The notes beneath the pieces were generated by a model, which worked only from the letters and a program-made list of their open reading frames with translations, was not told where the DNA came from and ran no database searches. Positions 56,340 through 58,225 of a stretch of DNA of 64,000 bases are shown here, one piece after another. Both the position numbers and the translations under genes were made by a program. The DNA lies in the NCBI RefSeq assembly GCF_006345805.1, contig NC_043003.1, positions 106,826,001 to 106,890,000 on the forward strand, written 5' to 3'. Position 1 is the stretch's first letter, and every line of letters begins with the position of its first letter. Origin of the DNA: Octopus sinensis (taxonomy: Eukaryota).

Positions 56340-58225
56340 GCTTCTTTAACACGACTATGGTACCTATGACTGTCTTTTTGTTTTGTTTTTTTCTTGATCT
56401 AGTCTCTCTTCATCCTTTGGTTTTCAAAGGTAGCCTGTATTTTAGTAGAAGCTGCTGTTTCTGTTTCTATCTCTTTCTAAACCTGTTCTCCTTTAACTCT
56501 TTCCACCTGCACAAACAGGTACTATGATTGTACACCTGATTGGTTACGTTTTTTAATATAAACTCTTCTCTGGTTACCCATCACTAAGTTTGTGCAGTTT
56601 GGTGCTACTTTTGTGTTCAAGGCTTTCTTTTTCTTTATATACTTCCTCTTTTAGATATCCCTTCACTGGTATTGCATAAGTAGTTACTATTTTTTTGCCC
56701 ATGGCTGTTTGTATTTTTTAGGTACTATTTCTCTTCAATGCATTCTAACACTAGGTGTGTATAGGTAGTGCTATTGTACTTATAGCTGTTTCTTTTCTTG
56801 ATATAGTTTCTCTTCCATGTATCCAATAACATCCGTTTAATAAGTAGGTACTACATTGTACCCATGTCTGTTTCAATTTAGTAATAGCTATTCTTCTAAG
56901 TACCCATCAATAGGTTTTGCATAGGAAGGTGATACTTTGGTACCCATTGCTGTTTCTATCTCTTGATATAGATTCTTTTCCACGTATGACAGCCCAACAC
57001 TTGCATAAATTGATGCTCTTTGTATGCAATGTTGTTTCTATTTCGTGTTCCAGTTCTTATAGCAAGTATTCCATCACTGGATTTCATAGAAAGAGACTAA
57101 TTTTGAAGGCATTGCAGTTTTTTATTCTTGATATTTTTTCTGTTCAGAGTATCCCATAAATAGGTTTGCCTAGGAAGGTTCTACTTTTACATTTATGGCT
57201 CTGTTTCATAATATTGCTTCTCTCCTAGGATCCCTCACTATATTCTCATAAGTAGATGCTACATATGTACACAAGAAGGTTTCTATTTCTCAATATAGTT
57301 TTTTTTTATATCTATAGGTGCAGGAGTGGCTGTGTGGTAAGTAGCTTGCTTACCAACCACATGGTTCCAGGTTCAGTCCCACTGTGTGACATCTTGGGCA
57401 AGTGTCTTCTGCTATAGTCCTGGGCCGACCAATGCTTTGTGAGTGGATTTGGTAGACGGAAACTGAAAGAAGCCTGTCGTATATATGTATATATATATGT
57501 ATGTGTGTGTATATGTTTGTGTGTCTGTCTTTGTCCCCCTAGCATTGCTTGACAACCGATGCTGGTGTGTTTACGTCCCCGTAAATTAGCGGTTCGGCAA
57601 AAGAGACCGATAGAATAAGTGCTGGGCTTACAAAGAATAAGTCCTGGGGTCGATTTGCTCGACTAAAGGCGGTGCTCCAGCATGGCCGCAGTCAAATGAC
57701 TGAAACAAGTAAAAGAGTAAAGAGTATCCCATCACTGACGTCTGCATTTGTAGCTTCTACATATTTACCCATGGCTATTCATATTGTCTCACATAGGTTC
57801 TCTTCTATATTACCACTTGTTTTGTCTAGGAAGTTGTTACTTTTGTACATGTAAAAGCTTCCATTTCTTAGTATAGTTTCTATTCTGTGTTGTCCCTCAC
57901 TTGGTTTGCATTCATAAGTGTAACTTCTGTACTCAGTACTATTTCTTTTGAAATATTTTCTCTCCCAGTGGTTCAATTATTTATTTGTTACATCTATGAT
58001 CACAAAAGTGACAAGGGATTATCTGCATAGTCCAAGCAGAACAAACACCACACAGGTTATTTTTTATGAGAAAGCAGTTTTTCATAGAATGATATAGTTT
58101 GCATAACTATGTGCTTCATTTGTGCCCATGGCTATTTTTCCTTAATATTGTCTCCCTTCTGTTTACTCCATCAATGGGTTTACATAGCAATGTGCTACTT
58201 TTGTTCCCATGGCTTTCTATTTCTT
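56340..58225 (-). repeat. Degenerate ~82-84-bp tandem array derived from a Penelope-like RT motif
   Basis: Unit anchors at about 56410, 56499, 56577, 56659, 56743, 56822, 56903, 56987, 57069, 57152, 57231, [SINE], 57727, 57810, 57893, 58085, 58166; unit 56901-56986 reads YVEKNLYQEIETAMGTKVSPSYA. Confidence 0.8.
57316..57726 (+). mobile_element. Young SINE-I inserted in the satellite
   Basis: Homology to other copies; the tail GAGTA coincides with the GAGTATCCCATC of the satellite unit. Confidence 0.92.

What the first reader, a model, noticed from the sequence alone, without database searches (positions are those of the whole stretch)
56340..58225. A satellite made from a Penelope-type reverse-transcriptase motif
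Seen: about 15-17 strongly diverged tandem units of ~82-84 bp. Minus-strand translations: YVEKNLYQEIETAMGTKVSPSYA (56901-56986; frameshifted remainder reads NLLMG), KIQTAMGKKIVTTYAIPVKGY (56655-56720), NIEENLCETI*IAMGKYV (57750-57810). Established: QxxGxAMG..APxYANLxMG is the conserved motif-4/B' region of Penelope-like RTs. No other RT motif or GIY-YIG sequence is recognisable alongside. Inference: one 28-codon RT segment was amplified head-to-tail (rolling-circle or repeated template switching at LYQxI microhomology) and then decayed. I know of no description of such an array.
Basis: partly seen in the sequence, partly recalled or inferred. Interest (0 to 1): 0.8.

Follow-up and report, generated by a model that had tools for sequence, protein, structure and literature searches.

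The report
Decayed repeat array from Penelope RT
A short piece (28 codons) of the reverse-transcriptase gene of a Penelope-like jumping gene was copied head-to-tail about 17 times and then left to rot; it is a real but ordinary, dead piece of transposon-derived repeat DNA in an animal genome.

Summary
Window 56328-58250 holds about 17 head-to-tail units of 77-90 bp, with an 84-nt consensus. The units are 60-86% identical to that consensus. TRF misses the array; autocorrelation, the repeat finder and iterated nhmmer find it, and only at this place in the 64 kb.

On the minus strand the consensus reads TAMGTKVAPTYANLVMGYLEEKLYQEIE. It aligns without gaps to positions 348-375 of a profile built from 43 full-length relatives. 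The tripled consensus scores 83 bits, against at most 4.5 bits for 500 shuffles. Nine of ten relatives scanned carry a C-terminal GIY-YIG nuclease, which is the canonical architecture of Penelope-like elements (PLEs).

No other part of a PLE ORF and no hammerhead ribozyme is present in the window. The array is non-coding: the longest ORF is 43 aa, and mismatches are spread evenly over codon positions. Unit similarity is star-like, with no homogenisation. The array is much older than the SINE-like repeat inserted in it (JC 0.33 against about 0.05).

Best reading: one 84-bp segment of a dead PLE copy was amplified locally in a single burst and then decayed neutrally. Tandem repeats derived from transposon ORFs are already known, so this is a new member of a known kind. 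Genome-wide "satellite" status and the amplification mechanism remain untested.

The parts
56328..58250 (-). Whole tandem array: 17 alignable, decayed units with an 84-nt consensus. The sense of the ancestral RT segment is the minus strand.
   Evidence: It is the only place in the window that hits the unit HMM or the PLE protein profile.
56328..56580 (-). Three weakest units (56328-56412, 56413-56497, 56498-56580). This is the 3' end of the array in RT sense, and it stops inside a unit at about 56340.
   Evidence: 60-71% identity to the consensus over partial lengths. Translations such as KEIETETAASTKIQATFENQ are still recognisable.
56581..57312 (-). Nine contiguous units (starts 56581, 56663, 56748, 56827, 56907, 56997, 57074, 57157, 57235). 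The best preserved is 56907-56996, reading VEKNLYQEIETAMGTKVSPSYA.
   Evidence: nhmmer E-values from 1e-6 to 5e-16. Identity to the consensus is 68-82%. PLE-profile hits fall at 56622-56711, 56786-56863, 56873-56980 and 57098-57190, mapping to profile positions 338-382.
57313..57726 (+). SINE-like dispersed repeat inserted into the array after it formed. It is flanked by a TATC duplication, and removing it restores the unit junction GTATCCCATCACT.
   Evidence: At least 20 copies or fragments occur in the window, the full-length ones at 88-95% identity. This copy is 95% identical to the consensus of ten copies, against 74% for array units. The junction was read.
57733..57979 (-). Three units (57733-57812, 57813-57896, 57897-57979).
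   Evidence: 71-73% identity to the consensus.
57980..58089 (.). 110-bp stretch inside the array that does not align with the units. It is either an unrelated insertion or a unit decayed beyond recognition.
   Evidence: 6-32% apparent identity to every unit. It has no copy elsewhere in the window.
58090..58250 (-). Two units at the 5' end of the array in RT sense (58090-58170, 58171-58250), reading KIAMGTNEAHSYANYI and KAMGTKVAHCYVNPL.
   Evidence: nhmmer E-values 2e-9 and 3e-11. Identity to the consensus is 75% and 86%.
55031..56165 (.). Microsatellite block next to the array: (ATT)n, (TA)n and (ATAG)n.
   Evidence: TRF. This is context only; PLEs are reported to favour microsatellite targets (PMC8557442).

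Best explanation
This is a dead, non-coding tandem array. It was made by amplifying one 84-bp internal piece of the ORF of a canonical Penelope-like retrotransposon, the type with an RT followed by a C-terminal GIY-YIG nuclease.

The piece is exactly 28 codons. It runs from the T of the motif-4/B core TAMG to the E four residues past the conserved LY, which is profile positions 348-375.

Shown: the unit's origin, its exact extent, the number of units, their neutral star-like decay, and the later SINE-like insertion.

Inferred:

1. An old PLE copy, or a fragment of one, lay here, possibly inserted near microsatellites.
2. A first 84-bp tandem duplication arose by replication slippage or by illegitimate or unequal exchange.
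3. Unequal exchange or slippage between the duplicates expanded it in one short burst to about 17 or more copies.
4. Amplification and homogenisation then stopped, and each unit accumulated substitutions and small indels independently (about 0.33 substitutions per site).
5. The rest of the PLE copy was lost by deletion or was never part of this locus.

I assign no present function. It behaves as neutral repeat DNA.
For: - **Tandem structure:**
- **Consensus:** 84 nt, reading GYLEEKLY(Q/*)EIETAMGTKVAPTYAN(Q/L)VM in one frame.
- **Database matches:** the consensus hits RT fragments that read ..Y.Q.KGTAMGTKVAPTYA(N/T)LV(M/L)GYLEEKLY..(about 20 aa)..W.RYLDDCFIIW, with up to 24 consecutive identical residues.
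- **Source family:** full-length relatives of 700-780 aa have RVT_1 plus a C-terminal GIY-YIG domain and match the unit at 20-24 of 28 residues.
- **Exact extent:** gapless alignment to profile positions 348-375. The score is 83 bits against a maximum of 4.5 bits for shuffles.
- **Only this segment is present:** tblastn with 43 full-length proteins, and a --max HMM scan of all six frames of the 64 kb, hit nothing outside profile positions 338-382.
- **Neutral decay:** mismatches to the consensus are 29%, 26% and 25% at codon positions 1, 2 and 3 (p = 0.35). Unit lengths are not multiples of three. The longest minus-strand ORF within the array is 43 aa.
- **Single burst:** mean pairwise identity is 0.588 against 0.565 expected for a star phylogeny, and neighbouring units are no more alike than distant ones.
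- **Age:** JC distance is 0.33 for the units and about 0.05 for the inserted SINE-like copy.
- **Precedent:** tandem repeats derived from transposon ORFs are described (PMC9659126).
Against: - The flanks (56166-56340 and 58251-58615) are unique sequence with no trace of the RT motifs that sit next to the segment in the parent. Motif C (YLDD) lies only about 20 codons downstream. If the array arose in place inside a PLE copy, flanks of the same age should still be detectable, because single 28-codon units are. An extra deletion step, or arrival of the array from elsewhere, has to be assumed.
- The parent element of this genome was not available, so the breakpoints and any microhomology could not be examined.
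- The host genome could not be searched, so "local one-off" is an assumption.
- No expression or small-RNA data could be consulted.
Confidence: 0.78

Rival explanations
1. The array is one old locus of a genome-wide satellite or minisatellite family whose monomer was born from the PLE RT segment. The family spread independently of the element, for example through extrachromosomal circles, rolling-circle copying and re-insertion, or by segmental movement.
For: The array has no PLE sequence on either side and its flanks are unique. This is what is expected if an already-formed array landed here. Star-like unit relationships fit a rolling-circle burst as well as they fit unequal exchange.
Against: There is only one array in 64 kb. 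There is no sign of homogenisation. A search with the doubled consensus against 5.8 billion protein clusters, which include eukaryotic contigs, returned only single-motif RT fragments and no product with tandem motifs. That search would miss decayed arrays.
Confidence: 0.17
2. The repeats were made at the RNA-to-cDNA step. The PLE reverse transcriptase jumped back repeatedly on its own template over the same 84 nt during one aberrant insertion event, so the array was integrated ready-made.
For: The unit is an exact internal piece of the element's own ORF. PLE insertions are known for complex tandem arrangements (PMC8557442).
Against: Target-primed reverse transcription starts at the 3' end of the RNA, so the 3' part of the element (motifs C-E, GIY-YIG, 3' end) should lie downstream of the array, and it does not. 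In two relatives the two breakpoint regions match at 6-8 of 27 bases in register, which is chance level. The tandem structures known for PLEs involve whole or 5'-truncated copies (pLTRs), not 84-bp internal pieces.
Confidence: 0.04
3. It is, or recently was, an exon of a host gene that encodes a protein with 28-residue repeats.
For: The consensus unit is 84 nt, a multiple of three, and is open apart from one CAA/TAA position.
Against: Every unit carries stops or frameshifts, and the longest ORF is 43 aa. Unit lengths are 77-90 nt and mostly not multiples of three. Substitutions are equal across codon positions. A multiple-of-three length is expected one time in three by chance.
Confidence: 0.01

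Closest known systems
Tandem repeats or satellites derived from transposon coding regions, as tabulated in PMC9659126: PROsat from LINE-1 ORF2 in Phodopus, HinfI repeat from CR1 ORF2 in chicken, CficCl-61-40 from a CACTA transposase, E3900 from an LTR-element gag
   Same: The monomer is a fragment of a mobile-element ORF that was amplified head-to-tail and no longer codes.
   Different: The source here is a Penelope-like element, a class not listed in that review. The monomer is very short (84 bp), is exactly 28 codons of the catalytic motif-4/B region, and is seen so far as a single decayed array of about 1.5 kb rather than an abundant satellite.
[quoted passage not shown]
   Same: The unit is homologous to their RT motif-4/B segment at 20-24 of 28 residues.
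   Different: Only 28 of about 740 codons are represented. There are no other RT motifs, no GIY-YIG, no pLTR and no hammerhead ribozyme. It is a derivative of a PLE, not a copy of one.
Non-LTR retrozymes: tandem hammerhead-ribozyme repeats related to PLE pLTRs (bioRxiv 10.64898/2026.07.22.740005; PMC4209133)
   Same: Tandemly arranged, non-autonomous sequences that trace back to PLEs.
   Different: Retrozyme units derive from the non-coding pLTR and carry a hammerhead ribozyme. This unit derives from the ORF and has no Rfam hit at all.
Ordinary minisatellites formed by slippage or unequal exchange
   Same: The unit size (tens of bp), array size (1-2 kb), single locus and absence of function all fit.
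   Different: The monomer has an identifiable protein-coding ancestry, so the original duplication can be mapped to the codon.

Membership tests
Penelope-like element (a copy of one) | RT domain with core motifs 1-7 and thumb | tested here: not met
   Only profile positions 338-382 (motif 4/B) are hit. tblastn with 43 full-length proteins and a six-frame --max HMM scan of the whole window find nothing else.
Penelope-like element (a copy of one) | GIY-YIG endonuclease domain | tested here: not met
   No hit to the C-terminal part of the profile anywhere in the window. The domain is present in the full-length relatives.
Penelope-like element (a copy of one) | pLTR with hammerhead ribozyme | tested here: not met
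   Rfam at gathering threshold on the whole window gives no match. A permissive scan of 54500-60500 gives no ribozyme family.
PLE-derived sequence (homology of the segment) | Significant, specific similarity of the unit to PLE RT motif 4/B, above shuffled controls | tested here: met
   83.3 bits against a maximum of 4.5 bits in 500 shuffles. The alignment to positions 348-375 is gapless. Database hits reach E = 1.8e-15. The generic Pfam RVT_1 model gives only 18 bits at profile positions 104-145.
PLE-derived sequence (homology of the segment) | The source RT family has the canonical PLE architecture (RT followed by a C-terminal GIY-YIG) | tested here: met
   Nine of ten full-length relatives scanned have GIY-YIG at residues about 610-810, after the RT. 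Several of them match the unit at 20-23 of 28 residues. The architecture definition is from PMC8557442. The clade within PLEs was not resolved.
Satellite DNA in the strict sense | Head-to-tail monomers | tested here: met
Satellite DNA in the strict sense | Long arrays and high copy number in the genome | not testable with these tools
   There is one array of about 1.5 kb net in the 64-kb window. No collection holding the host genome was searchable.
Satellite DNA in the strict sense | Homogenisation of monomers (concerted evolution) | tested here: not met
   Pairwise identity is 0.588, close to the 0.565 expected for independent decay. Neighbouring units are no more alike than distant ones.
Protein-coding tandem repeat | Open reading frame across units, with third-position excess of substitutions | tested here: not met
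   The longest ORF is 43 aa. Mismatches are 29%, 26% and 25% by codon position, p = 0.35.
Non-LTR retrozyme | Hammerhead ribozyme in each tandem unit | tested here: not met

The most novel reading that the evidence does not exclude
The array may not be a local accident. It could be a surviving locus of a satellite family seeded from the catalytic motif of a Penelope-like RT and spread on its own, or a product of the PLE enzyme's repeated template jumping. Either would explain why no other PLE sequence flanks it, and would make PLE coding sequence a previously unlisted source of satellite DNA in cephalopod-like genomes.
Probability: 0.15. Interest if true: 0.5.

Novelty: new member of a known kind. 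Interest (0 to 1): 0.25.

Why it matters
This is a clean, codon-resolved example of a tandem repeat being born from the coding sequence of a mobile element. The monomer can be mapped exactly to 28 codons of a Penelope-like RT. I found no listing of that element class among transposon sources of satellites.

It also has a practical side. TRF does not detect the array, and homology-based maskers would see only a string of tiny "Penelope" fragments. Such arrays are therefore probably under-counted in repeat annotations.

Beyond that it is a neutral fossil. It changes nothing about how PLEs or satellites are thought to work, unless further arrays are found.

Tried and rejected
- **TRF** at minimum score 30 found no ~82-bp period; the array is too diverged for it.
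- **Pfam on a single 29-34-aa unit** gave nothing. Three tandem units gave only a weak RVT_1 match (E = 0.0018) among equally weak spurious families.
- **PDB sequence search** of the unit gave no hit.
- **Two loci of relatives** (Mytilus L001; ENA contig L002) turned out to be decayed fragments without a full ORF. They could only be used for the breakpoint comparison, which was at chance level.
- **Higher-order repeat structure:** lags 165 and 245 are no stronger than 82 once the units are aligned.
- **Hammerhead ribozymes, other RNA families and tRNA** were all absent.
- **Host identification** failed. The LINE ORF is not on record. Its best relatives sit on anonymous contigs (GCA_024449705.1, SRR7158634), and these accessions appear in no indexed paper. 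The octopus-like look of the SINE rests on memory only.
- **Rejected readings:** chance resemblance, a host coding exon, and a relation to the neighbouring LINE. The LINE's RT motif B reads GIFKGDTLSPLLF, which is a different family.

Full report
**Setting**

The window is AT-rich eukaryotic DNA (GC 0.33-0.47) and is full of microsatellites. It carries at least 20 copies or fragments of a 414-bp SINE-like repeat. A LINE remnant with RVT_1 and zf-RVT domains lies on the minus strand at 51.8-54.6 kb. The organism could not be identified with the tools. The SINE resembles the abundant octopus SINE, but that rests on my memory and was not tested.

**Is the array there?**

Yes. TRF does not report it, but three other methods do.

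- Autocorrelation of 56340-57310 peaks at lags 82, 165 and 245 (z = 3.7-4.5).
- The repeat finder gives families of 4-9 copies spaced at about 82 bp and its multiples.
- An nhmmer search seeded with one unit and iterated four times recovers 16 hits. All are on the + strand between 56354 and 58225, and there are none elsewhere in the 64 kb.

Cutting at the profile anchors gives 17 alignable units of 77-90 bp between 56328 and 58250, plus one 110-bp stretch (57980-58089) that does not align. The 498-bp gap between unit starts 57235 and 57733 is a 414-bp SINE-like insertion at 57313-57726. It is flanked by a TATC duplication, and removing it restores the normal unit junction GTATCCCATCACT (read).

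**What is the unit?**

A profile consensus of the reverse-complemented units is exactly 84 nt. One frame reads GYLEEKLY(Q/*)EIETAMGTKVAPTYAN(Q/L)VM.

A search with two consensus units against 5.8 billion protein clusters returned 44 hits (best E = 1.8e-15). All are short ORF fragments from eukaryote-sized contigs. They read ..F.FN..Y.Q.KGTAMGTKVAPTYA(N/T)LV(M/L)GYLEEKLY.., then about 20 residues, then W.RYLDDCFIIW. That is RT motif B followed by the YxDD motif C, and up to 24 consecutive residues are identical to the unit.

A profile of these fragments finds about 3000 relatives, including Mytilus and Solemya entries named as reverse transcriptases. An exhaustive phmmer search with a 172-aa Mytilus fragment finds 15,086 relatives, many of them 700-780 aa long. 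Of ten full-length relatives scanned with Pfam, nine have a GIY-YIG domain at the C-terminus, after the RT. This is the architecture that defines canonical EN+ Penelope-like elements (PMC8557442). Several of those same proteins match the 28-residue unit at 20-23 positions.

**Exact extent of the amplified piece**

I built a 738-position profile from 43 full-length relatives. The unit TAMGTKVAPTYANLVMGYLEEKLYQEIE aligns without gaps to positions 348-375 (tAmGtkvAPtYAtLvlgYLEekLyekve). The amplified piece is therefore exactly 28 codons. The breakpoints fall between G347 and T348, and just after position 375.

The tripled real consensus scores 83.3 bits. The best of six frames over 500 shuffles has a mean of -3 and a maximum of 4.5 bits. 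The generic Pfam RVT_1 model sees the same place (profile positions 104-145) only weakly, so the similarity is specific to PLEs.

**What is not there**

- tblastn with the short fragments and with the 43 full-length proteins hits only the array.
- A --max HMM scan of all six frames of the whole window also hits only the array, and only profile positions 338-382.
- Motif C, which lies about 20 codons downstream in the parent, is absent.
- There is no hammerhead ribozyme or any other Rfam family.
- The flanks 56166-56345 and 58226-58620 are unique within the window.

**State of the array**

- It does not code. The longest minus-strand ORF within the array is 43 aa.
- Units are 60-86% identical to the consensus (mean 74%). 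Their lengths are mostly not multiples of three.
- Mismatches fall equally on codon positions 1, 2 and 3 (29%, 26%, 25%; p = 0.35).
- Mean pairwise identity is 0.588, against 0.565 expected if every unit decayed independently from one ancestor. Neighbouring units are no more alike than distant ones. This fits one burst of amplification with no later homogenisation and no higher-order repeat.
- The JC distance of units from their consensus is 0.33. The SINE-like copy inserted in the array is at about 0.05 from its own consensus, so the array is several times older.
- If the host is an octopus, the calibration in PMC13282606 (JC 0.2 is about 56 My and JC 0.065 about 18 My) would put the array at roughly 90 My. 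This figure is conditional on an untested identification.

**Mechanism**

Shown: the origin, extent, copy number and neutral star-like decay of the units, and the later SINE-like insertion.

Inferred: a first 84-bp duplication inside a dead PLE copy, by slippage or illegitimate exchange. Rapid expansion by unequal exchange followed, then arrest, and then loss of the rest of the element.

The missing flanks are the weak point. Sequence of the same age should still be detectable, because single 28-codon units are. Either a deletion occurred or the array arrived already formed. This keeps two rivals open. One is an independently spreading satellite family, for example through circles and rolling-circle copying (confidence 0.17). 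The other is repeated template jumping by the RT during one insertion (confidence 0.04). The second is disfavoured because target-primed reverse transcription should leave the 3' part of the element downstream of the array.

In two relatives the breakpoint regions match at 6-8 of 27 bases, which is chance level. A coding-exon reading and a chance resemblance are both rejected.

**Comparison with what is known**

Tandem repeats and satellites derived from transposons are well described, including some derived from ORFs. Examples are LINE-1 ORF2 giving PROsat, CR1 ORF2 giving the HinfI repeat, a CACTA transposase, and gag (PMC9659126). That review lists no Penelope-derived case.

The tandem sequences already known to derive from PLEs, the non-LTR retrozymes, come from the pLTR and carry hammerhead ribozymes (PMC4209133). 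This array does not.

It is therefore a new member of a known kind. It is not a PLE copy, because most defining features were tested and not met. It also cannot be shown to be a satellite in the strict sense.

**Verdict**

The "satellite" label, the amplification mechanism and the claim of no precedent remain unestablished. Interest is low to moderate (0.25).

Noticed in passing
window 57313-57726 (+), 58616-59026 (+), 5574-5981 (-), 9639-10054 (-), 16215-16619 (-), 20675-21107 (-), 21773-22194 (-), 30003-30416 (-), 39073-39478 (-), 47906-48318 (-), and further fragments: A 414-bp SINE-like dispersed repeat makes up a large share of the window. It has at least 20 copies or fragments; the ten full-length copies are 91-97% identical to their consensus. 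It has an internal (TATG/TG)n stretch and an (AGTAAAAG)n-like tail. ARAGORN finds no tRNA in it and Rfam finds no family. It looks like the abundant octopus SINE, from memory only.
   Followed up: partly
window 51796-54597 (-): A LINE retrotransposon remnant broken into three ORFs. 52808-53302 has RVT_1 (E = 2.7e-13), 51796-52662 has zf-RVT, and 53812-54597 has no Pfam hit. Its nearest database relative is 92% identical and sits on a Logan contig of SRR7158634. It is unrelated to the array.
   Followed up: partly
window 55031-56165: A dense run of microsatellites lies directly beside the array: (ATT)n 55031-55297, (TA)n 55631-55767 and (ATAG)n 55931-56165. A fragment of the SINE-like repeat (55733-55937) overlaps it. 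PLEs are reported to insert preferentially into microsatellites (PMC8557442), which is circumstantially consistent with an old PLE insertion here.
   Followed up: no
window 57980-58089: A 110-bp stretch inside the array matches neither the units nor anything else in the window. Its origin is unknown: either a small insertion or a unit mutated beyond recognition.
   Followed up: partly
window 6700-8500, 12700-13100, 23300-27900, 34900-35400, 37800-38300, 43500-44100: Many long spurious ORFs of 130-230 aa are made of low-complexity runs (poly-T/V/I, D/G-rich, HT/CV dinucleotide repeats, SL repeats). They reflect extensive simple-sequence DNA across the window, not genes.
   Followed up: no
L002 2576-4264 (+) (ENA contig ctg321561_36x_l of ERZ25072999): Next to a decayed PLE fragment on this unrelated eukaryotic contig lies a 562-aa ORF with no Pfam hit on record. 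A small neighbouring ORF has a weak CARD-domain hit. This was seen only while fetching relatives.
   Followed up: no
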